Below are positions 5,640 through 47,682 of a stretch of 64,000 nt of DNA, piece after piece (the first letter of the stretch is position 1; every line of letters begins with the position of its first letter). The translations under genes and the position numbers were made by a program. The DNA comes from Octopus sinensis. Its lineage: Eukaryota. Under the pieces are notes generated by a model. It saw only the letters and a list, made by a program, of their open reading frames with translations. It was not told the origin of the DNA and made no database searches. The stretch is from NCBI RefSeq assembly GCF_006345805.1, contig NC_043025.1, positions 15,996,001-16,060,000 of the forward strand, given 5' to 3'.

Positions 5640-7790
5640 AGATTGAAGCAATTTGAAGATGATCTCTGGTCCATTGTGAGAAATGTAAAATTTCAACGAT
5701 CACCACTAAGAAATAAACATCTGAGGTATCTTCGCAACATCACCAAAGAAATCAATTCTATGGATGCTATGTTGGTTCAATCTGATAAGACTGGAAATCT
5801 GTACAAACTTGATAAAGACTATTATTTGGAATTACTTAAAAAAGAAATTCAGAAGAAATATACAATTACTGATAAAAGAATACTCAACAAAGCCAACTTT
5901 GAGGCTATGAAAATTATGGAGAAGTATAAAATGAAGACAGAACCACTTGTTCCTAAGCAACCTCGGTTCATTTTGAAGGATCACAAACCAAATGATTTTA
6001 CTAACCCATCATTAAGGCTTATCTGCCCTTCTAGCTCTGACATCGGTATCCTTAGTAAAAATATACTAGATAAATATATTCCTAATTTAATTAAATCATT
6101 AAAACTTAGTTTATGGTCTAATTTGTTTCAAGTATTTGACTGGTTTAGTTCTATTACTAATAAGGGGAGTACTAAGTTTATCCAGTTTGATATTTCCAAT
6201 TTTTATTCATCTATTAATCCAATAGTACTTAATAAGGCACTTTGGCTTGCTCATAACAAAGCTGGTCTCACCCGAGAAGAAATTAATGTTGTGTTGGCAG
6301 CCAGAAGATCTATTATTAAATTTGATGATAAGTTGTGGGTCCGTAAAGACACACCAGATAGTTTCGATATACCAATGGGAAGTTCTGATTCAGCACAGAT
6401 AGCTGATTTGGTCTGTATATATATTCTTTTTGAAATGGCTGAAGAGTTCCCTAACATTTATGGAGATCTATATCGTGATGATTGTTTACTTTACCTCCAA
6501 AATGTTTCCAACCAAAAGGTACAAAAAGTTAAGAATAGTTTAGTTAATTTTTTCAGTAGAATGGGCTTAAAAATCGTTTTTGATGACGATATGATGAAGG
6601 CCAACTTTTTAGATATTATGCTTAATTTACACAGTGACTCTTACTTCCCATATTGTAAACCGTTGACCAATCTTAAGTACATTAGCAAATTTGTAATCAT
6701 CCTAGAGCAATTACTAAGAACTTAGTTAAGAATATTTCATTTAGATTATCTAAATTATCTGTTAGTGTCGATATTTTCAGTGATAATGCTGAATTCTATA
6801 ACTCTGCCTTAATTAAAGCAGGTTATACAGAGAAAATTTTCTACATTGATTCTACTCAGTCTAATTGTAAATTCAATAATGTAGATAAGATTTCTAGTCG
6901 TAAAAGAATTATTGATAACAAACATAACTTATGCACCGATATAAAGCGAATGAAGGCAGATAACCCTTATTTAATCCCCTATTATCGTTCTAAAAGTTAA
7001 TATAACACCTTCAAAAGTAATTACGCTATGAATACTAGTAAAAATATTTGGTTAATAATTCCTTATGGGAGACAAATTAAATCTAATCTCCCACTGCTGT
7101 TTCGTCAATACCAGAGGGCGCACACTCTCCTACCCTGATGTAATCTCCAGGGATACAGGCATCCAGCAACAGGACCTCCGTAATACCATGATGGACCGTG
7201 AAGTCTGGCGAGGCATAGTCAATTCCATTGTCTCGACCACGGTCGAACAATGATGATGATGATTGCTACGAATTTTCCAAACATTTCTAGATATTACTCT
7301 ATAATCAATTCACATAAGGTTAGGATAGGTTTTTCAAACACAAAAAATCTCTTGCAAATTATATCTTCTCATAATAACAAACTGTTAAATATTAATACAT
7401 TTACTAATACTAACATTAATTTAGCCAATACCATCCAACCCTCTAGAAATATTAATAACAAGGTTATTGTATCTGAAGTCAATTCCAATAGAATTAAGTT
7501 TATGTCAAGTAACTCTAAAATTCTATAAGATTGCATTGTTTATACCATTTATTCTTTTGAATAGTATCAGTGGAATTTTCGAAACATGTGACAAAAGTAA
7601 GAATATTTGATTTACACCTGTGTTAAACTCCATTTATTTATTCGTATATTATACAAAAAATTCCACATAAACACGAAGTTTCTACCTTTATAAACAAGGA
7701 GTTACAACCTCTTTACTTGCGAGATTTTTGCTGCCCTGGTAACTATTTATTTATTTTTTCCGTGTTAATCGTTAACAAGGTAAAAATACT
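5640..7790 (+). mobile_element. Penelope-like retroelement, degenerate (Naiad/Chlamys-type RT motifs)
   Basis: The 360-aa ORF has DKTGNLY, KDHK, FDISNFYSSI, PMGSSDSAQIADLV and YRDD. After a frameshift at ~6690 it continues NHPRAITKNL..RLSKLS..YNSALIKAGY, then FPN..INSHKVRIGFSNTKNLLQIISSHNNKLL. No GIY-YIG recognised. Interrupted by a LINE fragment at 7106. Confidence 0.78.
7106..7263 (+). mobile_element. Solo 3'-end insertion of the RTE-clade LINE that forms the large array
   Basis: caataccagaggg...gaccacggtcg (140 bp) + aacaa + (TGA)n. It splits the Penelope reading frame between SNLPLLFRQ and IATNFP. Confidence 0.9.
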
Positions 7791-21200: not shown

Positions 21201-21330
21201 GCGAAGGACCGAGATCTCTGGAGATATGGTGTGACTGCAAAGACCCGGGCTGCTTCCTGCACCAGTTCCGCATAGGCCCCTGCCCATTCAAAGTACCCCG
21301 GATCCCAGAACATCCCGCTTACTGTGGTTA
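18215..21330 (+). mobile_element. RTE-clade LINE, near-complete but disrupted ORF (APE + RT + PHD-type finger)
   Basis: APE: VGTVNVGTL, GGDFNGHVG, SQIDFIL, QHRLIISDF. RT: YRGIKLL, QFGF, DLEKAFDRVP, GVHQGSALSP, YADDL. Stops at ~18338, 19602 and 20763, and a frameshift near 19370. Confidence 0.92.
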
Positions 21331-24671: not shown

Positions 24672-24699
24672 ATGCAGGATTTAACCTATGGTGATCTGG
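24672..24699 (+). CDS. Exon C (28-nt micro-exon, MQDLTYGDL-G)
   Basis: tctttgaccag|ATG...CTGG|gtgagt. Encodes the family-typical TYGDLG helix before TM3. Phase 0 in, phase 1 out. Confidence 0.87.
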
Positions 24700-24824
24700 G
24701 TGAGTTTTTTTTCCCCCTGTTTGGTCTATACAGATAGCCTTGTATTTATCTACGTCTATGTATGTGTCTGTCTGTCTGTCAGTATCTATCTACCTATCTA
24801 TCTATCTATATATATATATATATA

Positions 24825-24969
24825 CTTTATTTAAAGCAGCAGAAAATTCAACAAAATCTGTTACTCTGAGTTTCTCGTTGCCGTTCATCAGACAAGAACT
24901 GTCTGATGAACGGCAACGTGAAACTCAGAGTAACAGATTTTGTTGAATTTTCTGCTGCTTAAAATAAAG
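24825..24969. repeat. Near-perfect 70-bp inverted repeat (foldback) with 5-nt loop
   Basis: Arms 24825-24894 and 24900-24969, with 2 mismatches by eye. Confidence 0.95.
24899..24936 (+). ncRNA. Minimal type I hammerhead ribozyme motif (Penelope-type)
   Basis: CUGU-CUGAUGA-ACG(GCAA)CGU-GAAA-CUC(A)GAG-UA|ACAG: intact core, 3-bp stem II with GNRA loop, palindromic stem III, GUA cleavage triplet and 4-bp stem I. A mirror copy on the - strand (24858-24895) has a stem II mismatch. Activity is untested. Confidence 0.72.
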
Positions 24970-25038
24970 CATATTACTCTACCACTGGTATTTGAGTACT
25001 CTTTTTTCCACCTTGTTTCACATTTATGTGTTTACTCC

Positions 25039-25086
<48 letters not shown>

Positions 25087-25222
25087 CACATGTACACATG
25101 CACACATGTGTGTGTGTGTGCGCGTATATATATATGTTTATATATACACATGCATATCGATTTATACATATATACACATACACACCCTTGTATACATACA
25201 TGTATACAAGGGCGTGTGTGTG

Positions 25223-25670
25223 TATTGGGTCATCCCATAAATAATGTGGTTTTTTTCAATTGCATGAACTAAAAGTCAGAGGGGGACGGGATAAACTGCC
25301 TGCATCAACTTGCTATAAAAGCAGGAAGTAACTTTACCTTGTCCTTATTCTTAGTACAAGTTTTGAAGAGTGCAGTTTGATTTTATCAGTTAAATCACCA
25401 TTCAAGTATGGCTGATGCCCGTGCCACCTGAGTGGCACGTCAAAAGCTTCATTCAAGTGTGGTTGATGCCAGTGCCGCCTGACTGGCTCTCATGCCGGTG
25501 GTATGTAAAAAGCAGCTACTATATTCTTGGAGTGGTTGGCATTAGGAAGGGCATCCAGCTGTAGAAACCTTCCCAAATCAGATTGGAGCCTGGTGCAGCC
25601 TCTGGGCTTGCCAGACCTCAATCAAAGTGTCCAACTATGCCAGTATTGGAAGGTGGATGTTAAACGACAG

Positions 25671-25701
<31 letters not shown>

Positions 25702-25850
25702 TTTCAAAGCTGTGATAGAAGGGACAAAGGACCATATTTGGCATGTTTTGCTTTATGAGTTCAGTAAAGGCAACAACGCACCGGAAAGTGTGAGGAATAT
25801 TGATGCAGTATATGGGAGGTCGGACAAGTGTAAGCCAGGGTCAGTGAAAG
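25223..25850 (+). mobile_element. Mariner 5' fragment containing a family C SINE
   Basis: TA+TTGGGTCATCCCATAAATAATG TIR. Transposase N-terminus KDHIWHVLLYEFSKGNNA follows the SINE. Same family as 47759-49321. Confidence 0.85.
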
Positions 25851-25983
25851 GTAGAATGCAATAAGGATAAAGTTAATGGAAATTAATGAAACGGTTTTCT
25901 AAAGAAAGGAAGGGAAATTTAGTAAAATGTTAAAAAGTACCTTGTGAATAATTTTGGTATAAAAAAAAAGGGAAGTGAACATT

Positions 25984-26383
25984 GGCGCAGGAGTGGCTGT
26001 GTGGTAAGTAGCTTGCTTAACAGCCATGTGGTTCTGGGTTCAGTCCCACTGCGTGGCACCTTGGGCAAGTGTCTTCTACTATAGCCTCGGACCGACTAAA
26101 GCCTTGTGAGTGGATTTGGTAGATGGAAACTGAAAGAAGCCCGTCGTATATATGTATATGTATATATGAGTGTTTGTGTGTCTGTGTTTGTTCCCCCAAC
26201 ATCGCTTGACAACCGATGCTGGTGTGTTTACGTCCCCGTCACTTAGCGGTTTGGTAAAAGTGACCGATAGAATAAGTACTTGGCTTACAAAGAATAAGTC
26301 CTGGGGTCGATTTGATCGACTAAAGGCGGTGCTCCAGCATGGCCGCAGTCAAATGACTGAAACAAGTAAAAGAGTAAAAGAGT
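25984..26383 (+). mobile_element. SINE family A, full length
   Basis: Matches the family A consensus end to end. Confidence 0.85.
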
Positions 26384-27454
26384 ATTGATTACTGGGATCT
26401 GATTTAAAAGTATTTGAGTTACTATTTCTAGCAGATAATCTAGGCTGATTCACGCCATCTTGGTTGGCGTTTGTCAGATGATGTCAGAGGTCAAGGAGGA
26501 GGTGAAGTTCACTTCATTAAGTTTATTTTGAGAACTTTGGGACAAATTGGCCAAACTTGGGACTGGAATGATTGTTGTTGTTGTTGCTGTTTGTTCCTTC
26601 TCGAGGCATGCCTGGCTCATAAGGGCCGGTTTCTCGGTTTCATTGACCTATAGGTTCCCCACCTGGACGGGATGCCGGTCCACCGCAGATGCAAGAGGAA
26701 AGAGTGAGAGAAAGTTGTGGTGAAAGAGTTAGCAGCAGTTATTATCTTTTGCTGGAGCCACATGGAGCTTAGGTATTTCACTCATAAACACACACACTGC
26801 CCAGTCTGAGATTTGAACCCGTAATCCTTTGACTGTGAGTCTGCCACTCTAACCACTAGGCCATGTGCCTCCACAGAATGATTGCATACAGAATTCTAAT
26901 TCATCCTTAACCTCGATCAAACACCACCAGGGCATATAGTCATTATAAATATATTATAGTCATGCTATTTAGCTGTCTTAAGTCCTGGGCCCGGGATCCA
27001 GTTAGCTCCCTGTAGGGAGCTTGCCTAAAAGTCTGCAGAACCTAGAAAATAAAAGATAGAGAAAAAGAAATAATGACAAAGTGAAATGAAATAGAAGTTT
27101 TTAAAGAGAAACTTATGTAGATACTAACAGTATTAATAGGAGATTAATATGTAAAATGCTTTTAGTATATCTCATTGTATTATAATAAGAACTACTTACT
27201 TTCAACGAACACCTATCAGTATCATTTTTCCATATATTTACTTTGTTTCTTTTTCTTCTTTTCTCTTTCTTTATGGTCTTTTATTTCCTAGGTTATTAAT
27301 GATAAATATGTTTTTTGTTTTCTTGTACCAAAACTACCTACTAGTTACTTTTTAATACGTTACTAAATTTCTCTTTTCTTCTTAGAAAACCGTCTTATTA
27401 ATTTCTATTAATTTTATCCTTACTGTCTTCCATACTTTTTTTTTTTTTTTTGCT

Positions 27455-27681
27455 TTAACCCTTTAGTATTTAAACCGGCCATATCCGGCCAAAATATTTA
27501 ATCTGTTTTATGTTCAAACTGACCAGATCCAGGCTCTCACACCTACCCTACAATGTTATTCTACATTAAGTAATTACACCATCAAGATCTTGAAGATATG
27601 AGATAATGCATGATTAATTCAAATCAGTGTGAACCAATAAACATATTGTTTGATAGAATAATCTGAACACTAAAGGGTTAA
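27455..27681 (-). mobile_element. piggyBac-like MITE, second copy
   Basis: TTAA-CCCTTTAG...CTAAAGGG-TTAA. Reverse-complement relative of 12-239. Confidence 0.72.
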
Positions 27682-27764
27682 ATATTTACTTATTTAAAAA
27701 ATTCTAATCTTTAATTTAATATTGTTCATATTTCTCATGTTTGATATCAATCCTATATTTCCTA

Positions 27765-30700
27765 TTCTACTATATATAACCAATTCTACTATAAGGCTCA
27801 GAACCTGGACATTATCAAAGAAGCTTGAGAGGCGGTTGGATAGAACATACACTCGCCTCCTTATGAGAGCTCAAAATCTCTCGTGGAAGCGTCATCCAAC
27901 CAAAGTAGAAATATATGGGAAACTACCACCTGTGTCATCTCTTGTGAAAGGTAGGAGAGTCCAGTTTGCTGGACATTGTTGTAGAGCTGAAAAAGAGGTA
28001 ATTTCTACTCTTCTCTGGAAGCCATCTACTCGCGATACCAGAGGGCGCACACTCTCCTACCCTGATGTAATCTCCAGGGATACAGGCATCCAGCAACAGG
28101 ACCTCCGTAATGCCGTGATGGACCGTGAGGTCTGGCGTAACATGGTAAATTCCATTGTCTCGACCACGGTCGCAATACCAGGGGGCGTACACTCTCCTAC
28201 CCTGATGTAATCTCCAGGGATACAGGCATCCAGCAACAGGACCTCCGTGATGCTATGATGGACCGTGAGGTCTGGCGTAGCATGGTAAATTCCATTGTCT
28301 CGACCACGGTCGCAATACCAGAGGACGCACACTCTCCTACCCTGATGTAATCTCCAGGGATACAGGCATCCAGCAACAGGACCTCCGTAATGCTATGATG
28401 GACCGTGAAGTCTGGCGTAACATAGTAAATTCCATTGTCTCGACCACGGTCACAATACCAGAGGGCGTACACTCTCCTACCCTGATGTAATCTCCAGGGA
28501 TACAGGCATCCAGCAACAGGACCTCCGTAATGCTATGATGGACTGTGAAGTCTGGCGTAACATAGTAAATTCCATTGTCTCAACCATGGTCGCAATACCA
28601 GAGGGCGTACACTCTCCTACCCTGATGTAATCTCCAGGGATACAGGCATCCAGCAACAGGACATCCGTAATGCTATGATGGACTGTGAAGTCTGGCGTAG
28701 CATAGTAAATTCCATTGTCTCGACCACGGTCGCAATACCAGAGGGTGCACACTCTCCTACCCTGATGTAATCTCCAGGGATACAGGCATCCAGCAACAGG
28801 ACCTCCGTAATGCTATGATGGACTGTGAAGTCTGGCGTAACATAGTAAATTCCATTGTCTCGACCACGGTCACAATACCAGAGGGCGTACACTCTCTCCT
28901 ACCCTGATGTAATCTCCAGGGATACAGGCATCCAGCAACAGGACCTCCGTAATGCTATGATGGACTGTGAAGTCTGGCGTAACATAGTAAATTCCATTGT
29001 CTCACCATGGTCGCAATACCAGAGGGCGTACACTCTCCTACCCTGATGTAATCTCCAGGATACAGGCATCCAGCAACAGGACATCCGTAATGCTATGATG
29101 GACTGTGAAGTCTGGCGTAGCATAGTAAATTCCATTGTCTCGACCACGGTCGCAATACCAGAGGGTGCACACTCTCCTACCCTGATGTAATCTCCAGGGA
29201 TACAGGCATCCAGCAACAGGACCTCCGTAATGCTATGATGGACTGTGAAGTCTGGCGTAGCATAGTAAATTCCATTGTCTCGACCACGGTCGCAATACCA
29301 GAGGGCGTACACTCTCCTACCCTGATGTAATCTCCAGGGATACAGGCATCCAGCAACAGGACCTCCGTAATGCTATGATGGACTGTGAAGTCTGGCGTAG
29401 CATAGTAAATTCCATTGTCTCGACCACGGTCGCAATACCAGAGGGCGTACACTCTCCTACCCTGATGTAATCTCCAGGGATACAGGCATCCAGCAACAGG
29501 ACCTCCGTAATGCTATGATGGACTGTGAAGTCTGGCGTAACATAGTAAATTCCATTGTCTCAACCATGGTCGCAATACCAGAGGGCGTACACTCTCCTAC
29601 CCTGATGTAATCTCCAGGGATACAGGCATCCAGCAACAGGACATCCGTAATGCTATGATGGACTGTGAAGTCTGGCGTAGCATAGTAAATTCCATTGTCT
29701 CGACCACGGTCGCAATACCAGAGGGTGCACACTCTCCTACCCTGATGTAATCTCCAGGGATACAGGCATCCAGCAACAGGACCTCCGTAATGCTATGATG
29801 GACTGTGAAGTCTGGCGTAACATAGTAAATTCCATTGTCTCGACCACGGTCACAATACCAGAGGGCGTACACTCTCCTACCCTGATGTAATCTCCAGGGA
29901 TACAGGCATCCAGCAACAGGACCTCCGTAATGCTATGATGGACTGTGAAGTCTGGCGTAACATAGTAAATTCCATTGTCTCAACCATGGTCGCAATACCA
30001 GAGGGCGTACACTCTCCTACCCTGATGTAATCTCCAGGGATACAGGCATCCAGCAACAGGCATCCGTAATGCTATGATGGACTGTGAAGTCTGGCGTAGC
30101 ATAGTAAATTCCATTGTCTCGACCACGGTCGCAATACCAGAGGTGCACACTCTCCTACCCTGATGTAATCTCCAGGGATACAGCATCCAGCAACAGGACC
30201 TCCGTAATGCTATGATGGACTGTGAAGTCTGGAATAACATAGTAAATTCCATTGTCTCGACCACGGTCGCAATACCAGGGTGCACACTCTCCTACCCTGA
30301 TGTAATCTCCAGGGATACAGGCATCCAGCAACAGGACCTCCGTAATGCTATGATGGACTGTGAAGTCTGGCGTAACATAGTAAATTCCATTTTCTCGACC
30401 ACGGTCGCAATACCAGAGGCGTACACTCTCTACCACCTGATGTAATCTCCAGGGATACAGGCAATCCAGCAACAGGACCTCCGTAATGCCATGATGGACC
30501 GTGAGGTCTGGCGTAACATGGTAAATTCCATTGTCTCGACCACGGTCGCTATACTACCAGAGGCGTACACTCTCCTACCCTGATGTAATCTCCGGGGATA
30601 CAGGCATCCAGCAACAGGACCTCCGTGATGCTATGATGGACCGTGAGGTCTGGCGTAGCATGGTAAATTCCATTGTCTCGACCACGGTCGCAATACCAGA

Positions 30701-33700
30701 GGCGCACACTCTCCTACCCTGATGTAATCTCCAGGGATACAGGCATCCAGCAACAGGACCTCCGTAATGCTATGATGGACCGTGAAGTCTGGCGTAACAT
30801 AGTAAATTCCATTGTCTCGACCACAGTCACAATACCAGAGGGCGTACACTCTCCTACCCTGATGTAATCTCCAGGGATACAGGCATCCAGCAACAGGACC
30901 TCCGTAATGCTATGATGGACTGTGAAGTCTGGCGTAGCATAGTAAATTCCATTGTCTCGACCACGTCGCAATACCAGAGGGTGCACACTCTCCTACCCTG
31001 ATGTAATCTCCAGGGATACATGCATCCAGCAACAGGACCTCCGTAATGCTATGATGGACTGTGAAGTCTGGCGTAACATGTAAATTCCATTGTCTCGACC
31101 ACGGTCGCAATACCAGAGGGTGCACACTCTCCTACCCTGATGTAATCTCCAGGGATACAGGCATCCAGCAACAGGACCTCCGTAATGCTATGATGGACTG
31201 TGAAGTCTGGCGTAACATAGTAAATTCCATTGTCTCGACCACGGTCGCAATACCAGAGGGTGCACACTCTCCTACCCTGATGTAATCTCCAGGGATACAG
31301 GCATCCAGCAACAGGACCTCCGTAATGCTATGATGGACCGTGAAGTCTGGCGTAACATAGTAAATTCCATTGTCTCGACCACGGTCACAATACCAGAGGG
31401 CGTACACTCTCCTACCCTGATGTAATCTCCAGGGATACAGGCATCCAGCAACAGGACCTCCGTAATGCTATGATGGACTGTGAAGTCTGGCGTAGCATAG
31501 TAAATTCCATTGTCTCGACCACGGTCGCAATACCAGAGGGTGCACACTCTCCTACCCTGATGTAATCTCCAGGGATACATGCATCCAGCAACAGGACCTC
31601 CGTAATGCTATGATGGACTGTGAAGTCTGGCGTAACATAGTAATTCCATTGTCTCGACCACGGTCGCAATACCAGAGGGTGCACACTCTCCTACCCTGAT
31701 GTAATCTCCAGGGATACAGGCATCCAGCAACAGGACCTCCGTAATGCTATGATGGACTGTGAAGTCTGGCGTAACATAGTAAATTCCATTGTCTCGACCA
31801 CGGTCGCAATACCAGAGTGTGCACACTCTCCTACCCTGATGTAATCTCCAGGGATACAGGCATCCAGCAACAGGACCTCCGTAATGCTATGATGGACTGT
31901 GAAGTCTGGCGTAACATAGTAAATTCCATTGTCTCGACCACGGTCGCAATACCAGAGGGTGCACACTCTCCTACCCTGATGTAATCTCCAGGGATACAGG
32001 CATCCAGCAACAGGACCTCCGTAATGCTATGATGGACTGTGAAGTCTGGCGTAACATAGTAAATTCCATTGTCTCGACCACGGTCGCAATACCAGAGGGC
32101 GTACACTCTCCTACCCTGATGTAATCTCCAGGGATACAGGCATCCAGCAACAGGACCTCCGTAATGCCATGATGGACCGTGAGGTCTGGCGTAACATGGT
32201 AAATTCCATTGTCTCGACCACGGTCGCAATACCAGAGGGCGTACACTCTCCTACCCTGATGTAATCTCCAGGGATACAGGCATCCAGCAACAGGACCTCC
32301 GTGATGCTATGATGGACCGTGAGGTCTGGCGTAGCATGGTAAATTCCATTGTCTCGACCACGGTCGCAATACCAGAGGGCGCACACTCTCCTACCCTGAT
32401 GTAATCTCCAGGGATACAGGCATCCAGCAACAGGACCTCCGTAATGCTATGATGGACCGTGAAGTCTGGCGTAACATAGTAAATTCCATTGTCTCAACCA
32501 CGGTCACAATACCAGAGGGCGTACACTCTCCTACCCTGATGTAATCTCCAGGGATACAGGCATCCAGCAACAGGACCTCCGTAATGCTATGATGGACTGT
32601 GAAGTCTGGCGTAACATAGTAAATTCCATTGTCTCAACCACGGTCGCAATACCAGAGGGCGTACACTCTCCTACCCTGATGTAATCTCCAGGGATACAGG
32701 CATCCAGCAACAGACCTCCGTAATGCTATGATGGACTGTGAAGTCTGGCGTAACATAGTAAATTCCATTGTCTCGACCACGGTCGCAATACCAGAGGGTG
32801 CACACTCTCCTACCCTGATGTAATCTCCAGGGATACAGGCATCCAGCAACAGGACCTCCGTAATGCTATGATGGACTGTGAAGTCTGGCGTAACATAGTG
32901 AATTCCATTGTCTCGACCACGGTCGCAATACCAGAGGGTGCACACTCTCCTACCCTGATGTAATCTCCAGGGATACAGGCATCCAGCAACAGGACCTCCG
33001 TAATGCTATGATGGACTGTGAAGTCTGGCGTAACATAGTAAATTCCATTGTCTCGACCACGATCGCAATACCAGAGGGTGCACACTCTCCTACCCTGATG
33101 TAATCTCCAGGGATACAGGCATCCAGCAACAGGACCTCCGTAATGCTATGATGGACTGTGAAGTCTGGCGTAACATAGTAAATTCCATTGTCTCGACCAC
33201 GGTCGCAATACCAGAGGGCGTACACTCTCCTACCCTGATGTAATCTCCAGGGATACAGGCATCCAGCAACAGGACCTCCGTAATGCTATGATGGACTGTG
33301 AAGTCTGGCGTAACATAGTAAATTCCATTGTCTCGACCACAGTCGCAATACCAGAGGGTGCACACTCTCCTACCCTGATGTAATCTCCAGGGATACAGGC
33401 ATCCAGCAACAGGACCTCCGTAATGCTATGATGGACTGTGAAGTCTGGCGTAACATAGTAAATTCCATTGTCTCGACCACGGTCGCAATACCAGAGGGTG
33501 CACACTCTCCTACCCTGATGTAATCTCCAGGGATACAGGCATCCAGCAACAGGACCTCCGTAATGCTATGATGGACTGTGAAGTCTGGCGTAACATAGTA
33601 AATTCCATTGTCTCGACCACGGTCGCAATACCAGAGGGTGCACACTCTCCTACCCTGATGTAATCTCCAGGGATACAGGCATCCAGCAACAGGACCTCCG

Positions 33701-36700
33701 TAATGCTATGATGGACTGTGAAGTCTGGCGTAGCATGGTAAATTCCATTGTCTCGACCACGGTCGCAATACCAGAGGGCGTACACTCTCCTACCCTGATG
33801 TAATCTCCAGGGATACAGGCATCCAGCAACAGGACCTCCGTTATGCTATGATGGACCGTGAAGTCTGGCGTAACATTGTAAATTCCATTGTCTCGACCAC
33901 GGTCGCAATACCAGAGGGCGCACACTCTCCTACCCTGATGTAATCTCCAGGGATACAGGCATCCAGCAACAGGACCTCCGTAATGCTATGATGGACTGTG
34001 AAGTCTGGCGTAACATAGTAAATTCCATTGTCTCGACCACGGTCACAATACCAGAGGGCGTACACTCTCCTACCCTGATGTAATCTCCAGGGATACAGGC
34101 ATCCAGCAACAGGACCTCCGTAATGCTATGATGGACTGTGAAGTCTGGCGTAACATAGTAAATTCCATTGTCTCGACCACGGTCGCAATACCAGAGGGTG
34201 CACACTCTCCTACCCTGATGTAATCTCCAGGGATACAGGCATCCAGCAACAGGACCTCCGTAATGCTATGATGGACTGTGAAGTCTGGCGTAACATAGTA
34301 AATTCCATTGTCTCGACCACGGTCGCAATACCAGAGGTGCACACTCTCCTACCCTGATGTAATCTCCAGGGATACAGGCATCCAGCAACAGGACCTCCGT
34401 AATGCTATGATGGACTGTGAAGTCTGGCGTAGCATGGTAAGTTCCATTGTCTCGACCACGGTCGCAATACCAGAGGGCGTACACTCTCCTACCCTGATGT
34501 AATCTCCAGGGATACAGGCATCCAGCAACAGGACCTCCGTAATGCTATGATGGACTGTGAAGTCTGGCGTAACATAGTAAATTCCATTGTCTCGACCACG
34601 GTCGCAATACCAGAGGGTGCACACTCTCCTACCCTGATGTAATCTCCAGGGATACAGGCATCCAGCAACAGGACCTCCGTAATGCTATGATGGACTGTGA
34701 AGTCTGGCGTAACATAGTAAATTCCATTGTCTCGACCACGGTCGCAATACCAGAGGGTGCACACTCTCCTACCCTGATGTAATCTCCAGGGATACAGGCA
34801 TCCAGCAACAGGACCTCCGTAATGCTATGATGGACTGTGAAGTCTGGCGTAACATAGTAAATTCCATTGTCTCGACCACGATCGCAATACCAGAGGGTGC
34901 ACACTCTCCTACCCTGATGTAATCTCCAGGGATACAGGCATCCAGCAACAGGACCTCCGTAATGCTATGATAGACTGTGAAGTCTGGCGTAACATAGTAA
35001 ATTCCATTGTCTCGACCACGGTCGCAATACCAGAGGGCGTACACTCTCCTACCCTGATGTAATCTCCAGGGATACAGGCATCCAGCAACAGGACCTCCGT
35101 AATGCCATGATGGACCGTGAGGTCTGGCGTAACATGGTAAATTCCATTGTCTCGACCACGGTCGCAATACCAGAGGGCGTACACTCTCCTACCCTGATGT
35201 AATCTCCAGGGATACAGGCATCCAGCAACAGGACCTCCGTAATGCTATGATGGACTGTGAAGTTTGGCGTAACATAGTAAATTCCATTGTCTCAACCATG
35301 GTCGCAATACCAGAGGGCGTACACTCTCCTACCCTGATGTAATCTCCAGGGATACAGGCATCCAGCAACAGGACCTCCGTAATGCTATGATGGACTGTGA
35401 AGTCTGGCGTAGCATAGTAAATTCCATTGTCTCGACCACGGTCGCAATACCAGAGGTGCACACTCTCCTACCTACCCTGATGTAATCTCCAGGGATACAG
35501 GCATCCAGCAACAGGACCTCTGTAATGCTATGATGGACTGTGAAGTCTGGCGTAACATAGTAAATTCCATTGTCTCGACCACGGTCGCAATACCAGAGGG
35601 CGTACACTCTCCTACCCTGATGTAATCTCCAGGATACAGGCATCCAGCAACAGAACCTCCGTAATGCTATGATGGACTGTGAAGTCTGGCGTAACATAGT
35701 AAATTCCATTGTCTCGACCACGGTCGCAATACCAGAGGGCGTGCACTCTCCTACCCTGATGTAATCTCCGGGGATACAGGCATCCAGCAACAGGACCTCC
35801 GTAATGCTATGATGACGTGAAGTCTGGCGTAGCATAGTAAATTCCATTGTCTCGACCACGGTCGCAATACCAGAGGGTGCACACTCTCCTACCCTGATGT
35901 AATCTCCAGGGATACAGGCATCCAGCAACAGGACCTCCGTAATGCTATGATGGACTGTGAAGTCTGGCGTAACATAGTAAATTCCATTGTCTCGACCACG
36001 GTCGCAATACCAGAGGGTGCACACTCTCCTACCCTGATGTAATCTCCAGGATACAGGCATCCAGCAACAGGACCTCCGTAATGCTATGATGGACTGTGAA
36101 GTCTGGCGTAACATAGTAATTCCATTGTCTCGACCACGATCGCAATACCAGAGGGTGCACACTCTCCTACCCTGATGTAATCTCCAGGGATACAGGCATC
36201 CAGCAACAGGACCTCCGTAATGCTATGATGGACTGTGAAGTCTGGCGTAACATAGTAAATTCCATTGTCTCGAACACGGTCGCAATACCAGAGGGCATAC
36301 ACTCTCCTACCCTGATGTAATCTCCGGGGATACAGGCATCCAGCAACAGGACCTCCGTAATGCTATGATGGACTGTGAAGTCTGGCGTAACATAGTAAAT
36401 TCCATTGTCTCGACCACAGTCGCAATACCAGAGGGTGCACACTCTCCTACCCTGATGTAATCTCCAGGGATACAGGCATCCAGCAACAGGACCTCCGTAA
36501 TGCTATGATGGACTGTGAAGTCTGGCGTAACATAGCAAATTCCATTGTCTCGACCACAGTCGCAATACCAGAGGGTGCACACTCTCCTACCCTGATGTAA
36601 TCTCCAGGGATACAGGCATCCAGCAACAGGACCTTCGTAATGCTATGATGGACTGTGAAGTCTGGCGTAACATAGTAAATTCCATTGTCTCGACCACGAT

Positions 36701-39700
36701 CGCAATACCAGAGGGTGCACACTCTCCTACCCTGATGTAATCTCCAGGGATACAGGCATCCAGCAACAGGACCTCCGTAATGCTATGATGGACTGTGAAG
36801 TCTGGCGTAGCATGGTAAATTCCATTGTCTCGACCACGGTCGCAATACCAGAGGGCGTACACTCTCCTACCCTGATGTAATCTCCAGGGATACAGGCATC
36901 CAGCAACAGGACCTCCGTAATGCTATGATGGACCGTGAAGTCTGGCGTAACATAGTAAATTCCATTGTCTCGACCACGGTCGCAATACCAGAGGGCACAC
37001 TCTCCTACCCTGATGTAATCTCCAGGGATACAGGCATCCAGCAACAGGACCTCCGTAATGTTATGATGGACTGTGAAGTCTGGCGTAACATAGTAAATTC
37101 CATTGTCTCGACCATGGTCGCAATACCAGAGGGTGCTCACTCTCCTACCCTGATGTAATCTCCAGGTATTCAGGCATCCAGCAACAGGACCTCCGTAATG
37201 CTATGATGAACTGTGAAGTCTGGCGTAACATAGTAAATTCCATTGTCTGGACCACGGTCGCAATACCAGAGGGTGCACACTCTCCTACCCTGATGTAATC
37301 TCCAGGGATACAGGCATCCAGCAACAGGACCTCCGTAATGCTATGATGGACTGTGAAGTCTGGCGTAACATAGTAAATTCCATGTCTCGACCACGATCGC
37401 AATACCAGAGGGTGCACGCTCTCCTACCCTGATGTAATCTCCAGGGATACAGGCATCCAGCAACAGGACCTCCGTAATGCTATGATGGACTGTGAAGTCT
37501 GGCGTAACATAGTAAATTCCATTGTCTCGACCACGGTCGCAATACCAGAGGGCGTACACTCTCCTACCCTGATGTAATCTCCAGGGATACAGCATCCAGC
37601 AACAGGACCTCCGTAATGCTATGATGGACTGTGAAGTCTGGCGTAACATAGTAAATTCCATTGTCTCGACCACAGTCGCAATACCAGAGGGTGCACACTC
37701 TCCTACCCTGATGTAATCTCCAGGGATACAGGCATCCAGCAACAGGACCTCCGTAATGTTATGATGGACTGTGAAGTCTGGCGTAACATAGTAAATTCCA
37801 TTGTCTCGACCACAGTCGCAATACCAGAGGGTGCACACTCTCCTACCCTGATGTAATCTCCAGGGATACAGGCATCCAGCAACAGGACCTCCGTAATGCT
37901 ATGATGGACTGTGAAGTCTGGCGTAACATAGTAAATTCCATTGTCTCGACCACGATCGCAATACCAGAGGGTGCACACTCTCCTACCCTGATGTAATCTC
38001 CAGGGATACAGGCATCCAGCAACAGGACCTCCGTAATGCTATGATGGACTGTGAAGTCTGGCGTAACATAGTAAATTCCATTGTCTCGACCACGGTCGCA
38101 ATACCAGAGGGCGTACACTCTCCTACCCTGATGTAATCTCCAGGGATACAGGCATCCAGCAACAGGACCTCCGTAATGCTATGATGGACTGTGAAGTCTG
38201 GCGTAACATAGTAAATTCCATTGTCTCGACCACGGTCGCAATACCAGAGGGTGCACACTCTCCTACCCTGATGTAATCTCCAGGGATACAGGCATCCAGC
38301 AACAGGACCTCCGTAATGCTATGATGGACTGTGAAGTCTGGCGTAACATAGTAAATTCCATTGTCTCGACCACGGTCGCAATACCAGAGGGTGCACACTC
38401 TCCTACCCTGATGTAATCTCCAGGGATCCAGGCATCCAGCAACAGGACCTCCGTAATGCTATGATGGACTGTGAAGTCTGGCGTAGCATGGTAAATTCCA
38501 TTGTCTCGACCACGGTCGCAATACCAGAGGGCGTTCACTCTCCTACCCTGATGTAATCTCCAGGGATACAGGCATCCAGCAACAGGACCTCCGTAATGCT
38601 ATGATAGACCGTGAAGTCTGGCGTAACATAGTAAATTCCATTTTCTCGACCACGGTCGCAATACCAGAGGGCGTACACTCTCCTACCCTGATGTAATCTC
38701 CAGGGATACAGGCATCCAGCAACAGGACCTCCGTAATGCTATGATGGACTGTGAAGTCTGGCGTAGCATAGTAAATTCCATTGTCTCGACCATGGTCGCA
38801 ATACCAGAGGGTGCTCACTCTCCTACCCTGATGTAATCTCCAGGGATACAGGCATCCAGCAACAGGACCTCCGTAATGCTATGATTGACTGTGAAGTCTG
38901 GCGTAACATAGTAAATTCCATTGTCTCGACCACGGTCGCAATACCAGAGGGTGCACACTCTCCTACCCTGATGTAATCTCCAGGGATACAGGCATCCAGC
39001 AACAGGACCTCCGTAATGCTATGATGGACTGTGAAGTCTGGCGTAACATAGTAAATTCCATTGTCTCGACCACGATCGCAATACCACAGGGTGCACACTC
39101 TCCTACCCTGATGTAATCTCCAGGGATACAGGCATCCAGCAACAGGACCTCCGTAATGCTATGATGGACTGTGAAGTCTGGCGTAACATAGTAAATTCCA
39201 TTGTCTCGACCACAGTCGCAATACCAGAGGGTGCACACTCTCCTACCCTGATGTAATCTCCAGGGATACAGGCATCCAGCAACAGGACCTCCGTAATGCT
39301 ATGATGGACTGTGAAGTCTGGCGTAACATAGTAAATTCCATTGTCTCGACCACAGTCACAATACCGGAGGGTGCACACTCTCCTACCCTGATGTAATCTC
39401 CAGGGATACAGGCATCCAGCAACAGGACCTCCGTAATGCTATGATGGACTGTGAAGTCTGGCGTAACATAGTAAATTCCATTGTCTCGACCACGATCGCA
39501 ATACCAGAGGGTGCACACTCTCCTACCCTGATGTAATCTCCAGGGATACAGGCATCCAGCAACAGGACCTCCGTAATGCTATGATGGACTGTGAAGTCTG
39601 GCGTAACATAGTAATTTCCATTGTCTTGACCACGGTCGCAATACCAGAGGGCGTACACTCTCCTACCCTGATGTAATCTCCAGGGATACAGGCATCCAGC

Positions 39701-41750
39701 AACAGGACCTCCGTAATGCTATGATGGACTGTGAAGTCTGGCGTAACATAGTAATTCCATTGTCTCGACCACGGTCGCAATACCAGAGGGCGCACACTCT
39801 CCTACCCTGATGTAATCTCCAGGGATACAGGCATCCAGCAACAGGACCTCCGTAATGCTATGATGGACTGTGAAGTCTGGCGTAACATAGTAAATTCCAT
39901 TGTCTCGACCACGTCGCAATACCAGAGGGTGCACACTCTCCTACCCTGATGTAATCTCCAGGGATACAGGCATCCAGCAACAGGACCTCCGTAATGCTAT
40001 GATGGACTGTGAAGTCTGGCGTAACATAGTAAATTCCATTGTCTCGACCACGATCGCAATACCAGAGGGTGCTCACTCTCCTACCCTGATGTAATCTCCA
40101 GGGATACAGGCATCCAGCAACAGGACCTCCGTAATGCTATGATGGACTGTGAAGTCTGGCGTAACATAGTAAATTCCATTGTCTCGACCACGGTCGCAAT
40201 ACCAGAGGGCGTACACTCTCCTACCCTGATGTAATCTCCAGGGATACAGGCATCCAGCAACAGGACCTCCGTAATGCTATGATGGACTGTGAAGTCTGGC
40301 GTAACATAGTAAATTCCATTGTCTCGACCACAGTCGCAATACCAGAGGGTGCACACTCTCCTACCCTGATGTAATCTCCAGGGATACAGGCATCCAGCAA
40401 CAGGACCTCCGTAATGCTATGATGGACTGTGAAGTCTGGCGTAACATAGTAAATTCCATTGTCTGGACCACAGTCGCAATACCAGAGGGTGCACACTCTC
40501 CTACCCTGATGTAATCTCCAGGGATACAGGCATCCAGCAACAGGACCTCCGTAATGCTATGATGGACTGTGAAGTCTGGCGTAACATAGTAAATTCCATT
40601 GTCTCGACCACGATCGCAATACCAGAGGGTGCACACTCTCCTACCCTGATGTAATCTCCAGGGATACAGGCATCCAGCAACAGGACCTCCGTAATGCTAT
40701 GATGGACTGTGAAGTCTGGCGTAACATAGTAAATTCCATTGTCTCGACCACGGTCGCAATACCAGAGGGCGTACACTCTCCTACCCTGATGTAATCTCCA
40801 GGGATACAGGCATCCAGCAACAGGACCTCCGTAATGCTATGATGGACTGTGAAGTCTGGCGTAACATAGTAAATTCCATTGTCTCGACCACGGTCGCAAT
40901 ACCAGAGGGCGCACACTCTCCTACCCTGATGTAATCTCCAGGGATACAGGCATCCAGCAACAGGACCTCCGTAATGCTATGATGGACTGTGAAGTCTGGC
41001 GTAACATAGTAAATTCCATTGTCTCGACCACGGTCGCAATACCAGAGGGTGCACACTCTCCTACCCTGATGTAATCTCCAGGGATACAGGCATCCAGCAA
41101 CAGGACCTCCGTAATGCTATGATGGACTGTGAAGTCTGGCGTAACATAGTAAATTCCATTGTCTCGACCACGGTCGCAATACCAGAGGGTGCACACTCTC
41201 CTACCCTGATGTAATCTCCAGGGATACAGGCATCCAGCAACAGGACCTCCGTAATGCTACGATGGACTGTGAAGTCTGGTGTAGCATGGTAAATTCCATT
41301 GTCTCGACCACGGTCGCAATACCAGAGGGCGTACACTCTCCTACCCTGATGTAATCTCCAGGGATACAGGCATCGAGCAACAGGACCTCCGTAATGCTAT
41401 GATGGACTGTGAAGTCTGGCGTAACATAGTAAATTCCATTGTCTCGACCACGGTCGCAATACCAGAGGGCGCACACTCTCCTACCCTGATGTAATCTCCA
41501 GGGATACAGGCATCCAGCAACAGGACCTCCGTAATGCTCTGATGGACCGTGAAGTCTGGCGTAACATAGTAAATTCCATTGTCTCGACCACGGTCGCAAT
41601 ACCAGAGGGTGCACACTCTCCTACCCTGATGTAATCTCCAGGGATACAGGCATCCAGCAACAGGACCTCCGTAATGCTATGATGGACTGTGAAGTCTGGC
41701 GTAGCATGGCAAATTCCATTGTCTCGACCACGGTCGAACAATGATGATGA
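27765..41750 (+). mobile_element. Single 5'-truncated RTE-clade (RTE-X-like) LINE insertion with internally amplified 3' end
   Basis: The left part encodes ILLY..TWTLSKKLERRLD.TYTRLLMRAQNLSWKRHPT..RRVQFAGHCCR..WKP. The right end is ggtcgaacaa(tga)n. The perfect 11-bp direct repeat TATATTTCCTA at 27754-27764 and 41751-41761 is a candidate TSD. Confidence 0.9.
28033..41736 (+). repeat. Tandem array (satellite) of a 140-bp LINE-3'-end unit, ~98 copies
   Basis: Unit caataccagaggg(t/c)gcacactctcctaccctgatgtaatctccagggatacaggcatccagcaacaggacctccgtaatgctatgatggactgtgaagtctggcgtaacatagtaaattccattgtctcgaccacggtcg. 13,704 bp/140 = ~98, derived from coordinates rather than counted unit by unit. Confidence 0.97.
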
Positions 41751-42213
41751 TATATTTCCTAGACATTATCTCCAAGAACTTTTATTTAGCTTCTGTCTGT
41801 TATATTTCTCTTTATCTTTACAATCCTTTTTCTAGGTTATTAATGATAAATATATCTCTTGCCTTTTCTTCTACTGAATTTATCAACCTGTTACTTTTTA
41901 ATATCCCACTAAATTCTCCTTCCCTTCTATTAACTTTATGATTATTGTTGTATTCTATATTCCATAAGGTTCTTCTTTTAAAGAAATATTGACTTTGCAT
42001 TCTTGAAACATGTTGAGGGATTATTTTTTAACATGGACTTAGTTTAACCCGAAGAGCAGCCTTAACATCTGCATTCATTTACAGATCGTTAATATTAATG
42101 CAGACATGAAGTAATTTATTACTTATTATAAGCTATAATTAAACAAATCATCTCTACGTTCTTATTAAGCTGTGAAACAATTGTCGTTAAATAAGAATTC
42201 TAATGGCTAAAAA

Positions 42214-42802
42214 AATTTTATATTTTTCTCTTTGTTTTTCTCTTGTATCCATTCTGTATATTCTATATTTTTGTAGAATGATATGTTAAGGAGCTTCTTT
42301 TTTTTTTTGAGAAACACGGGATGAGTTTAATCCATATATTGTGACTTAAATATATATGTATTTTTATATATCTACTCATCTGTCTGTCTGTCTCTCTATA
42401 TTTATATATATGTTATATATATAAAGCACCATCCGAACGTGACCGATGCCAACCCTGCCTCGAATGGCTTCTGTGCTGGCGGCACATAAAAAGCACCAAC
42501 CGATCGTGACCGATGCCAGACCCCTCTGGCTCCTGTGCAGGTGGCACGTAAAAAGCACCCACTACACTCGCGGAGTGGTTGGCGTTAGGAAGGGCATCCA
42601 GCTGTAGAAACACTGCCAGACCAGACTGGAGCCTGGGGCAGCCCCTGGCTCCCCAGACCCCGGTCGAACCGTCCAACCCGTGCTAGCGCGGAAAAACGGA
42701 CGTTAAACGATGATGATGATGATGATGATGATAGATATACACACATACACACACATATATACACACACATGCACACATACATACACACACACATATATAC
42801 AT

Positions 42803-42858
<56 letters not shown>

Positions 42859-43328
42859 CGACATATATAGAGATACATATAAATTATATATATATATTTG
42901 TGAAAAGGGTGGACGTTGTTACACAAGCAGTTGTGCAGGTAAAAGTGTTAGTAAATATGGTCGGATTGACCTGAAAATTTGCACACCTGTATTAAAAGTG
43001 GTGGGGAGTTTGCTCAATTGAAAGGCGTGGCCTCTAGGGCAAAATTCCTCATCTTTAAAATGTAGCCCAAGTAGTCCTGAATGAAAACAGTATGTGTGCG
43101 TGTGTGTGTGTATATTTATGTATATAACATATATATAAATATAGAGAGACAGACAGACAGACAGATGAGTAGATAGATAAAAATACATATATATTTAAGT
43201 CACAATATATGGATTAAACTCATCCCGTGTTTCTCAAAAAAAAAAAAGCTCCTTAACATATCATTCTACAAAAAATATAGAATATACAGAATGGATACAA
43301 GAGAAAAACAAGGAGAAAAATATAAAAT
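42214..43328. repeat. Long inverted repeat (~205-bp arms) enclosing a SINE and a ~190-bp core
   Basis: 42214-42420 is a near-perfect reverse complement of 43122-43328. Confidence 0.9.
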
Positions 43329-43335
43329 ATAAAAT

Positions 43336-43363
43336 CCCGAGCAAGGCCGGGTATCTCTGCTAG
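43336..43363 (+). mobile_element. Helitron-like 3' terminus
   Basis: CCCG-agcaaggc-CGGG hairpin, then 8 nt, then CTAG|T. The 5' end was not identified. Confidence 0.5.
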
Positions 43364-43566
43364 TATATAATACACACACACACACATATAGATAGATAAA
43401 GATATACATACATATATGGAAAACGGACGTTAAGCAATGATGATGATGATGATGAAACACTGGGGTCATTGCAATCAACTAGTCCCCTCCCACAAAATTT
43501 CAGGCTTTGTCCCTTAATTAGAAAGGATTATTATTATTATGTAAATTTTTTTTTTCAACTTTGTAG

Positions 43567-43632
43567 GATATTTTGCAATGGGGTGGTTTGGCAGACTGGT
43601 GGTTGATATTGTCCTGCTGGTGTCACAAATTG
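43567..43632 (+). CDS. Exon D (G-YFAMGWFGRLVVDIVLLVSQI-G, TM3)
   Basis: ttttcaactttgtag|GA...ATTG|gtgagt. 66 nt, phase 1 to phase 1. Matches the GRxxVDxxxxxSQxG TM3 pattern. Confidence 0.92.
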
Positions 43633-43759: not shown

Positions 43760-44213
43760 TGTGGTACCAGTGCCGGTGGCACATAAGAAAACCATCCGAA
43801 CGTGGCCGTAGCCAGTACCGCATCGACTGGCCTCCGTGCTGAGGGCACGTAACAAACACCATCCGAGCGTGGCCGTCTGCCAGCCTTGTCTGGCACCTGT
43901 GTCGGTGGCACATAAAAAACACCATCCGAGCGTGGCCATCTGCCAGCCTCGTCTGGCACCTGTGTTGGTGGCACATAAAAAACACCATCCAAGCGTGGCC
44001 GTCTGCCAGCTTCGTCTGGCACCTGTGTCGGTGGCACATAAAATCACCCACTACACTCTCGAGTGGTTGGCGTTAGGAAGGGCATCCAGCCGTAGAAACA
44101 CTGCCAGATCTGACTGGCCTGGTGTAGCCTTCGGGCTTGCCAGACCCCAGTTTAACCGTCCAACCCATGCTAGCATGGAAAGCGGACGTTAAACGATGAT
44201 GATGATGATGATG
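43760..44213 (+). mobile_element. Family C element with ~4 tandem 5' modules
   Basis: caccatcc(g/a)agcgtggcc..ctgccagc..gtctggcacctgtg..ggtggcacataaaa is repeated, then the standard 3' half with (GAT)n. Confidence 0.85.
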
Positions 44214-47615: not shown

Positions 47616-47682
47616 GTTTCTGTTGTGCCTATCTAATATTTATCTGTGAGAACCTGTCTGACAACATCAAAGGGTTGTCAAT
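47616..47682 (+). CDS. Exon E (G-FCCAYLIFICENLSDNIKGLS, end of TM3)
   Basis: tttctttccttcag|GT...TCAAT|gtaagt. 67 nt, phase 1 to phase 2. GFCCAYLIFI-x-ENL is characteristic of AVT3/SLC36-like proteins. Confidence 0.92.

What the first reader, a model, noticed from the sequence alone, without database searches (positions are those of the whole stretch)
27754..41761. One LINE insertion whose last 140 bp are repeated ~98 times between its body and its tail: a retrotransposon 3'-end concatemer that became a satellite
Seen: an 11-bp direct repeat (TATATTTCCTA, 27754-27764 and 41751-41761) brackets ~270 bp of RTE-clade ORF, then 13.7 kb of 140-bp units, then the intact native end ggtcgaacaa(TGA)n. 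Removing all but one unit restores an ordinary ~420-bp 5'-truncated LINE. Inference: the array grew inside a single insertion event. It may have been seeded during target-primed reverse transcription by the RT jumping back to the template 3' end (concatemeric cDNA), or by microhomology-mediated duplication, and then expanded at DNA level. It makes up ~74% of an 18.9-kb intron of a transporter gene. I cannot tell whether it has been described before.
Basis: partly seen in the sequence, partly recalled or inferred. Interest (0 to 1): 0.9.

Follow-up and report, generated by a model that had tools for sequence, protein, structure and literature searches.

The report
Octopus LINE tail amplified into array
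One short copy of an RTE-type jumping gene, sitting in an intron of an octopus amino-acid transporter gene, has had a 140-bp piece of its 3' end copied head-to-tail 98 times; it is a clean, early-stage example of the known route from transposon to tandem repeat, not a new kind of element.

Summary
An 11-bp direct repeat (27754-27764 and 41751-41761) brackets a 5'-truncated RTE-like LINE. Its 140-bp 3' coding segment is present as 98 tandem units (28033-41736), followed by the native end AACAA(TGA)3. All 97 junctions share one breakpoint, GGTCG|CAATACC, with a 3-nt TCG microhomology, so there was a single founder duplication. Blocks of several units are duplicated far more often than chance allows, and mutations that arose inside the array have spread to many units. 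Most of the array therefore grew at DNA level. The element fills 74% of an 18,867-bp GT-AG intron of an Aa_trans transporter gene, in the sense orientation. The closest public copy is a normal monomer in Octopus vulgaris.

How the founder duplication arose is unresolved. Two clues favour reverse transcription. An independent copy in the same window (7106-7262) starts at exactly the unit's first base. All internal units carry A at unit position 2, while the resident first unit and its closest relative carry G. A DNA-only microhomology duplication is not excluded. The label "satellite" is not shown, because only one locus is known. I could not test read support, an empty site, or a genome-wide count of the junction. 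Novelty: new member of a known kind. Interest is moderate.

The parts
27754..27764 (.). Left copy of the 11-bp target-site duplication, TATATTTCCTA
   Evidence: Read directly. The chance of such a match between the two flanks is about 0.004.
27765..27777 (+). 13-nt filler at the 5' junction (TTCTACTATATAT). Its first 10 nt repeat LINE bases 27784-27793.
   Evidence: Read directly. Alignment to L001 and L002 shows that LINE homology starts at AACCAATTCTAC.
27778..28032 (+). Body of the 5'-truncated RTE-like LINE, encoding the C-terminal part of its single ORF (...TWTLSKKLERRLD...LLWKPSTR)
   Evidence: The frame is open. A protein search gave 84 homologues, up to 90% identical. Relatives carry an APE endonuclease plus RVT_1. 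It is 92% identical in DNA to an Octopus vulgaris copy.
28033..28172 (+). Unit 1, the resident copy of the 140-bp segment. It starts CGATACC and is the only unit with G at position 2.
   Evidence: The same G is present in the L002 copy.
28173..41736 (+). Units 2-98 of the 140-bp tandem array. Each starts CAATACC after the junction GGTCG|CAATACC.
   Evidence: TRF; junction table; block duplications; variant columns.
41737..41750 (+). Native LINE end, AACAA(TGA)3: the last two codons, then the stop codon and simple-repeat tail
   Evidence: The same end is found in the solo copy, L001 and L002.
41751..41761 (.). Right copy of the 11-bp target-site duplication
7106..7262 (+). Separate solo copy of the same LINE family: exactly one unit plus AACAA(TGA)4. 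It starts at CAATACC, the same base as the array unit.
   Evidence: It is 94.7% identical to the unit plus tail. The sequence was read directly. There is no homology upstream (94% and 89% of shuffles scored at least as well against the window LINE and L002). No clear target-site duplication was found.
24672..24699 (+). Host-gene micro-exon upstream of the intron that holds the array
   Evidence: AG/GT splice sites. The spliced peptide matches Pfam Aa_trans.
24700..43566 (+). Host intron of 18,867 bp. The LINE and its array lie inside it, in the sense orientation.
43567..43632 (+). Host-gene exon downstream of the intron (..YFAMGWFGRLVVDIVLLVSQIG)
47616..47682 (+). Next host-gene exon (FCCAYLIFICENLSDNIKGLS)
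   Evidence: The three exons together hit Aa_trans with E = 4.7e-9 and 35.8 bits, above the 25.6-bit cut-off.

Best explanation
Step 1 is shown. A 5'-truncated copy (about 430 bp) of an RTE-type LINE inserted once by target-primed reverse transcription. It landed in the sense orientation in an intron of an octopus Aa_trans amino-acid transporter gene and made an 11-bp target-site duplication.

Step 2: that there was one founder junction is shown; how it arose is inferred. A 140-bp piece of the 3' end was duplicated head-to-tail once. This piece is the last 46 2/3 codons of the ORF and stops 5 nt before the stop codon and tail. The duplication occurred at a 3-nt TCG microhomology: body ..CTCG|C(G/A)ATACC, tail ..GGTCG|AACAA. 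I think reverse transcription most likely made this founder junction. It could have been a template switch during insertion. It could also have been a second RT event primed from a break in the resident copy's own 3' end, copying another RNA of the family that carried A at unit position 2.

Step 3 is shown. The dimer then grew to 98 units at DNA level, by unequal exchange or replication slippage that moved blocks of several units at a time. Mutations that arose within the array spread along with these blocks.

No function is indicated. The array is non-coding, its frame is broken at every junction, and it is carried passively in the intron.
For: Single insertion:
- One target-site duplication pair brackets the whole structure.
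- The monomer form matches normal copies L001 and L002.

Single founder junction:
- All 97 junctions have the same breakpoint.

DNA-level growth:
- Near-identical blocks of 4 units: 5 observed against 0.06 expected.
- Near-identical blocks of 6 units: 2 observed against 0 expected. Units 69-74 match units 88-93, and units 4-6 equal units 11-13.
- The derived T at column 92 is in 82 of 98 units. The ancestral C survives in 15 units that lie in clusters.
- The first 20 units are twice as far from the consensus as the rest.

Lean towards an RT seed:
- The only other copy of the family in the window (7106-7262) begins at exactly the unit's first base, with no upstream homology.
- The left breakpoint lies 5 nt from the stop codon and tail, inside the terminal hairpin, where RT starts.
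- Unit position 2 is A in 97 of 97 internal units, in the solo copy and in L001. Relatives encode Asn (AAT) there. It is G in resident unit 1 and in L002.
- The same insertion carries a 10-nt re-copied stretch at its 5' junction.
Against: - A 3-nt microhomology junction is equally what a DNA-level tandem duplication would leave.
- The G-to-A difference at position 2 is a CpG transition. It could have arisen while only two or a few units existed and then become fixed.
- The solo-copy coincidence is a single observation, and the solo has no clear target-site duplication.
- No exceptional RNA structure was found (z = -0.39), and no ribozyme was found at the unit start, so nothing explains a preferred RT stop there.
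- I found no second locus with the junction. However, the collections I could search hold almost no octopus DNA.
Confidence: 0.55

Rival explanations
1. DNA-only origin. After an ordinary insertion, replication slippage or microhomology-mediated repair duplicated 140 bp between the two TCG triplets. The terminal hairpin may have stalled replication. Unequal exchange then amplified the duplication. Reverse transcription played no part after the insertion.
For: - The 3-nt microhomology junction fits.
- The left breakpoint lies inside an 11-bp hairpin that could stall replication.
- Other TE-internal tandem arrays are common in this window, for example the 61-63-bp SINE-like arrays at 23526-24141, 43762-44043 and 53916-54108.
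- All later growth is demonstrably at DNA level.
Against: This model needs three coincidences:
- The right breakpoint is the exact first base of an independent 5'-truncated copy.
- The left breakpoint is within 5 nt of the stop codon and tail.
- An early G-to-A change at unit position 2 became fixed in 97 of 97 units, while other changes that arose in the array, such as those at columns 14-16 and 92, are still polymorphic.
Confidence: 0.35
2. The whole concatemer, tens of units long, was made in one target-primed reverse transcription event by repeated jump-back of the RT. It has changed little since.
For: The breakpoint is uniform at all junctions. RTs of non-LTR elements and bacterial DRT2 can make concatemeric cDNA by template jumping (papers listed).
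Against: - There are 69 distinct unit sequences, with shared derived variants arranged in duplicated multi-unit blocks. This requires later DNA-level turnover.
- Ancestral and derived states are interleaved in clusters.
- An RT making 97 identical 3-nt-guided jumps with no variation in position and no added bases is unlikely.
Confidence: 0.05
3. Assembly artefact: the array is absent, or grossly mis-sized, in the real genome.
For: Tandem arrays are prone to mis-assembly, and no reads could be examined.
Against: The units are not identical; there are 69 distinct sequences. Variants form an ordered, non-periodic block structure with unique flanks on both sides. At 13.7 kb the array is within the length of a single HiFi read. 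The exact copy number remains unverified.
Confidence: 0.03

Closest known systems
Satellite and tandem repeats derived from LINE 3' ends or ORF2. Examples are the common cetacean satellite (L1 3' end), the chicken HinfI repeat (CR1 3'UTR plus partial ORF2), PROsat and Pvc20 (L1 ORF2), and 18HT (HeT-A 3' region). These are reviewed in PMC9659126 and PMC12628747.
   Same: A sub-segment of a non-LTR retrotransposon, at or near its 3' end, is turned into a head-to-tail array.
   Different: Those are abundant, multi-locus and mostly heterochromatic satellites whose birth site is lost. Here there is one 13.7-kb euchromatic, intronic array. It is still inside its parental insertion, with body, tail and target-site duplication intact.
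Tail-to-internal tandem dimers of non-LTR retrotransposons, formed by double insertion and then expanded by unequal exchange (McGurk and Barbash 2018, PMC5932611)
   Same: The 3' end of one copy is joined to a 5'-truncated start of the next. The two-stage model also matches: a small tandem first, then unequal exchange.
   Different: The junction here lacks the tail, the last 5 nt, and any target sequence. A classical second insertion next to the first does not fit. Only a variant primed from inside the resident 3' end would.
Short tandem repeats inside retrotransposons that expand into satellites (Ogre LTR elements; Vondrak et al. 2020, PMC7004042)
   Same: The array arises within a retroelement and expands in place.
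   Different: In Ogre the repeats are a standing feature of the element's 3'UTR and are carried to many loci. Here normal copies of the family are monomeric (solo copy, L001, L002).
Template jumping by non-LTR RTs (R2) and concatemeric cDNA made by DRT2 reverse transcriptases (papers listed, e.g. PMC12039810, PMC11100668)
   Same: This is a possible way of working: RT leaves the template at one point and resumes near its 3' end at a short microhomology, giving head-to-tail copies.
   Different: There is no evidence here that more than the first junction was made this way. R2 jumps are end-to-end, whereas this junction is internal on both sides.

Membership tests
RTE clade of non-LTR retrotransposons | Single ORF of about 1000 aa with an N-terminal APE endonuclease followed by RT; element of about 3.2-3.8 kb | tested here: met
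   This was tested on relatives only. P0102 (911 aa, 50% identical over the shared C-terminus) has Exo_endo_phos plus RVT_1. Members of its cluster, at 1010-1011 aa, lie on 3.6-3.8-kb contigs. The window copy keeps only the last 137 aa.
RTE clade of non-LTR retrotransposons | Very short or absent 3'UTR ending in short simple repeats rather than poly(A) (own knowledge: Malik and Eickbush 1998) | tested here: met
   The stop codon is the first TGA of the (TGA)n tail in the window element, the solo copy and L002. L001 ends in TAA followed by (TGA)n.
RTE clade of non-LTR retrotransposons | RT-domain phylogeny groups the element with reference RTE elements | not tested
   The copy has no RT domain, and no reference set was available. 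RTE-clade LINEs are documented in Octopus (PMC9115989), but that element (RTE-2_OV) has 3'UTRs of about 600 nt and is not this family.
Satellite DNA (strict sense) | Long head-to-tail array of a monomer of 100 bp or more | tested here: met
   98 units covering 13.7 kb
Satellite DNA (strict sense) | High genomic abundance, with arrays at several loci | not testable with these tools
   There is only one array in the window. Searches with junction peptides found no other array. The JGI metagenomes hold no copy of the family at all, so their lack of the junction says nothing.
Double-insertion tandem of non-LTR elements (McGurk and Barbash) | The junction contains the intact 3' tail of the upstream copy and usually target-site sequence | tested here: not met
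   All junctions read GGTCG|CAATACC, with no AACAA(TGA)n and no intervening bases.
Double-insertion tandem of non-LTR elements (McGurk and Barbash) | The downstream copy starts at a 5'-truncation point of the kind seen in independent insertions | tested here: met
   The solo copy at 7106-7262 starts at the same base. This is a single observation.
RT-made concatemer (template jumping) | The same donor-acceptor junction recurs at independent loci with different target-site duplications | not testable with these tools
   This needs a k-mer search of the octopus genome or reads. No such collection was available.

The most novel reading that the evidence does not exclude
The RT of this RTE family, or break repair templated by its RNA, preferentially leaves the template at the TCG just upstream of CAATACC, about 153 nt from the 3' end, and resumes at the TCG in the terminal hairpin. 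If so, 'unit plus tail' mini-copies and near-tail-to-internal dimers would be regular products of retrotransposition. The same junction would recur at many octopus loci, and the LINE machinery itself would seed tandem arrays that later grow at DNA level.
Probability: 0.2. Interest if true: 0.7.

Novelty: new member of a known kind. Interest (0 to 1): 0.4.

Why it matters
Many satellites trace back to transposons, but the first steps are rarely seen, because the parental copy and its flanks are lost. Here all the landmarks survive in one place:
- the target-site duplication;
- the unrepeated body;
- the first (resident) unit;
- one uniform founder junction;
- the native tail.

That makes the order of events readable. 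It also makes the question of whether the seed was made by reverse transcriptase or by DNA repair directly testable. The tests are a genome-wide count of one 20-mer and a survey of 5' ends in a public chromosome-level octopus assembly.

For the host gene, the array puts 98 sense-strand copies of a LINE 3' hairpin into a 19-kb intron. No effect of this is shown.

Tried and rejected
- Fixed-register segmentation failed because of small indels. I replaced it with anchor-based segmentation. The apparent junction indels in the first MAFFT alignment were alignment artefacts.
- There is no simple higher-order repeat. The lag analysis shows no single period, only a weak minimum at lag 4. Block duplications are the real signal.
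- A self-cleaving ribozyme or other known RNA family defining the unit start: no Rfam match even at E = 10.
- A strong RNA structure as an RT stop: the 174-nt 3' end folds no better than shuffles (z = -0.39). Only an 11-bp terminal hairpin stands out.
- Hidden upstream homology of the solo copy: none.
- The junction elsewhere:
  - JGI metagenomes gave 0 hits. They also gave 0 hits for an internal unit 25-mer, so this result is uninformative.
  - Junction-spanning antisense and sense ORF queries found only normal copies.
- Locating the window in an annotated assembly through its TE ORFs: not on record.
- Candidate exons near 26.5 kb and 45.4 kb turned out to be SINE-like sequence.
- Classical double insertion was rejected because the junction lacks a tail.
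- Unit 1 as a simple 'ancestral' unit was rejected. It shares the derived G97 and G112 with interior units.
Full report
**1. Observation.**
Tandem Repeats Finder reports one array at 28030-41736 with period 140, 98.0 copies and 96% matches. Anchor-based segmentation gives 98 units between 28033 and 41736. Of these, 76 are exactly 140 bp and the rest are 138-144 bp. There are 69 distinct unit sequences, and mean pairwise identity is 96.7%.

The 11-mer TATATTTCCTA is present at 27754-27764 and 41751-41761. Two random 40-bp pieces of this repeat-rich window share an exact 11-mer or longer with P about 0.004. The right copy also abuts the LINE tail directly.

After the last unit comes AACAATGATGATGA (41737-41750). 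Joining body, one unit and tail gives 422 bp with a single open frame. It reads ...LLWKPSTRDTRGRTLSYPDVISRDTGIQQQDLRNAVMDREVWRNMVNSIVSTTVEQ*, and its stop codon is the first TGA of the tail.
- The unit stops 5 nt before the stop codon.
- Clear LINE homology starts at 27778.
- Bases 27765-27777 are a 13-nt filler whose first 10 nt repeat 27784-27793.

**2. What the element is.**
The 137-aa translation finds 84 proteins with E-values down to 6e-70. A search of 1.8 billion representative proteins finds 5870. Longer relatives carry an APE endonuclease plus RVT_1 in a single ORF of about 1000 aa, on contigs of 3.6-3.8 kb. With no 3'UTR and a (TGA)n tail, this is the RTE type of LINE. I did not test clade membership by phylogeny.

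A junction-peptide search happened to retrieve an ordinary monomeric copy on Octopus vulgaris chromosome OX597819.1 (L002, 92% DNA identity). The window is therefore almost certainly octopus. RTE-clade LINEs are documented there (PMC9115989), although that element is a different family.

L002 and the window element begin within about 10 nt of each other (AACCAATTCTACTATA). Both encode Asp (CGATACC) where other relatives encode Asn (CAATACC). They look like one subfamily of about 430 bp.

**3. Host context.**
Three + strand exons with canonical AG/GT sites lie at 24672-24699, 43567-43632 and 47616-47682. They splice into MQDLTYGDLGYFAMGWFGRLVVDIVLLVSQIGFCCAYLIFICENLSDNIKGLS. This peptide matches Pfam Aa_trans at E = 4.7e-9, above the gathering score. 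The intron 24700-43566 is 18,867 bp, and the element occupies 74.2% of it, in the sense orientation.

**4. One founder junction.**
All 97 junctions read ..CCACGGTCG|CAATACCAGAGG.., apart from point changes that are mostly CpG transitions. The native body reads ..CTACTCG|C(G/A)ATACC, and the native tail reads ..ACGGTCG|AACAATGA. The duplication therefore joined two TCG triplets 140 bp apart. The left breakpoint lies in the 3' arm of an 11-bp terminal hairpin, CATTGTCTCGACCACGGTCGAACAATG.

**5. Growth was at DNA level.**
Near-identical multi-unit blocks occur far more often than when unit order is permuted:

| Block size | Observed | Expected |
|---|---|---|
| 4 units | 5 | 0.06 |
| 6 units | 2 | 0 |

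Units 69-74 match units 88-93, units 36-41 match units 90-95, and units 4-6 are identical to units 11-13.

Relatives show that C at column 92 is ancestral. T is now in 82 of 98 units, and C survives in clusters at units 1-3, 18-20 and 30-32. At columns 14-16 the ancestral CGC remains in 8 units, while two different derived forms (TGC in 52, CGT in 34) have spread. The first 20 units are about twice as far from the consensus as the rest. This is the usual picture of unequal exchange or slippage acting on a tandem array. It rules out the idea that the present array is an unaltered RT product.

**6. How the first duplication arose.**
I considered three models:
- (A) a DNA-level microhomology duplication;
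- (C) a second RT event primed from a break inside the resident copy's 3' end, with the new cDNA 5'-truncated and joined at TCG.

All three predict the observed junction. Four observations lean towards B or C:
- The only other copy of the family in the window is the solo at 7106-7262, which is 94.7% identical. It consists of exactly one unit plus AACAA(TGA)4. It begins at the very base where the unit begins, and it has no detectable homology upstream.
- The left breakpoint is 5 nt from the stop codon and tail, where RT initiates.
- Unit position 2 is A in all 97 internal units, in the solo copy and in L001. It is G in resident unit 1 and in L002. A second RNA of the A type explains this at once. 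Models using the resident sequence need an early CpG transition that became fixed while other changes within the array stayed polymorphic.
- The same insertion has a 10-nt re-copied stretch at its 5' junction.

Against B and C:
- The solo copy is a single observation and has no clear target-site duplication.
- The G-to-A change is the commonest kind of mutation.
- I found no ribozyme and no unusual RNA structure that would create a preferred stop.

I put RT seeding at roughly 55% and DNA-only seeding at roughly 35%. A classical double insertion is excluded because the junction carries no tail and no target sequence.

**7. What could not be tested.**
- The JGI metagenome collection has neither the junction nor any copy of the unit, so that negative is uninformative.
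- Protein searches with sense and antisense junction-spanning ORFs found only monomeric copies. Arrays are unlikely to be annotated as genes, so this too is weak.
- Read support, the empty site and copy-number variation could not be examined.

**8. Comparison with what is known.**
Satellites derived from LINE 3' ends or ORF2 are known. Examples are the cetacean common satellite, the chicken HinfI/CR1 repeat, PROsat and 18HT (PMC9659126, PMC12628747). Tail-to-internal tandems of non-LTR elements that later expand by unequal exchange are also known (PMC5932611). So are retroelement-internal repeats that grow into satellites (PMC7004042).

This locus is a new and unusually well-preserved example of that kind, not a new kind. 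Calling it a satellite is premature, because it is one intronic array. Its value lies in preserving all the landmarks of its birth. That makes the RT-versus-repair question answerable with a simple genome-wide survey.

Noticed in passing
window 7106-7262 (+): A solo copy of the same LINE family made of exactly one array unit plus AACAA(TGA)4. Its 5' end coincides to the base with the array's unit boundary. It has no clear target-site duplication. It lies just downstream of a Penelope-like or other RT ORF (5643-6725).
   Followed up: yes
window 27765-27793: The 5' junction of the array-bearing LINE has a 13-nt filler whose first 10 nt (TTCTACTATA) repeat the LINE bases 19 nt downstream. This small re-copy scar is compatible with a polymerase or RT jump at integration.
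   Followed up: partly
L002 10061-10392 (-), Octopus vulgaris OX597819.1: A monomeric copy of the family with nearly the same 5' end as the window element (within about 10 nt), the same G at unit position 2, and a 72-bp internal deletion. This hints at a discrete subfamily of about 430 bp or a truncation hotspot.
   Followed up: partly
window 23526-24141, 42419-42559, 43762-44043, 53916-54108: Tandem arrays of a 61-67-bp motif (..GGCACGTAAAAGCACCATCCG..) inside SINE-like elements, with 2 to 10 copies each. TE-internal tandem repeats are common in this genome.
   Followed up: no
window 25380-25698, 47915-48230, 58570-58830 (-): SINE-like elements ending in ..TAAACGA(TGA)n-type tails that resemble the LINE's AACAA(TGA)n end. 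They may be non-autonomous partners of this RTE family.
   Followed up: no
window 18340-21272 (+) and 15985-18174 (-): Two further LINE-like elements with long ORFs. One has endonuclease-like and RT-like ORFs of 338, 374 and about 169 aa. The other is a 729-aa RT ORF on the minus strand. Neither product is on record in the gene-position index.
   Followed up: partly
window 62592-63047 (-) and 48808-49269 (+): ORFs that look like remnants of a mariner-type transposase.
   Followed up: no
window 35329-36162 (-): A 277-aa antisense ORF runs through six array units because small indels restore the frame. Other antisense ORFs of 132-165 aa occur along the array. They are by-products of the repeat and are not annotated anywhere.
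   Followed up: yes
window about 3700-4220 (+): An ORF starting MAINAEDTENLLKYH.., rich in Thr, Pro and Asp. It could be a first exon, either of the Aa_trans gene or of another gene. It gave only a weak Sororin_middle hit.
   Followed up: partly
window 56002-56244: A 36-bp tandem repeat with 6.8 copies at 98% identity.
   Followed up: no
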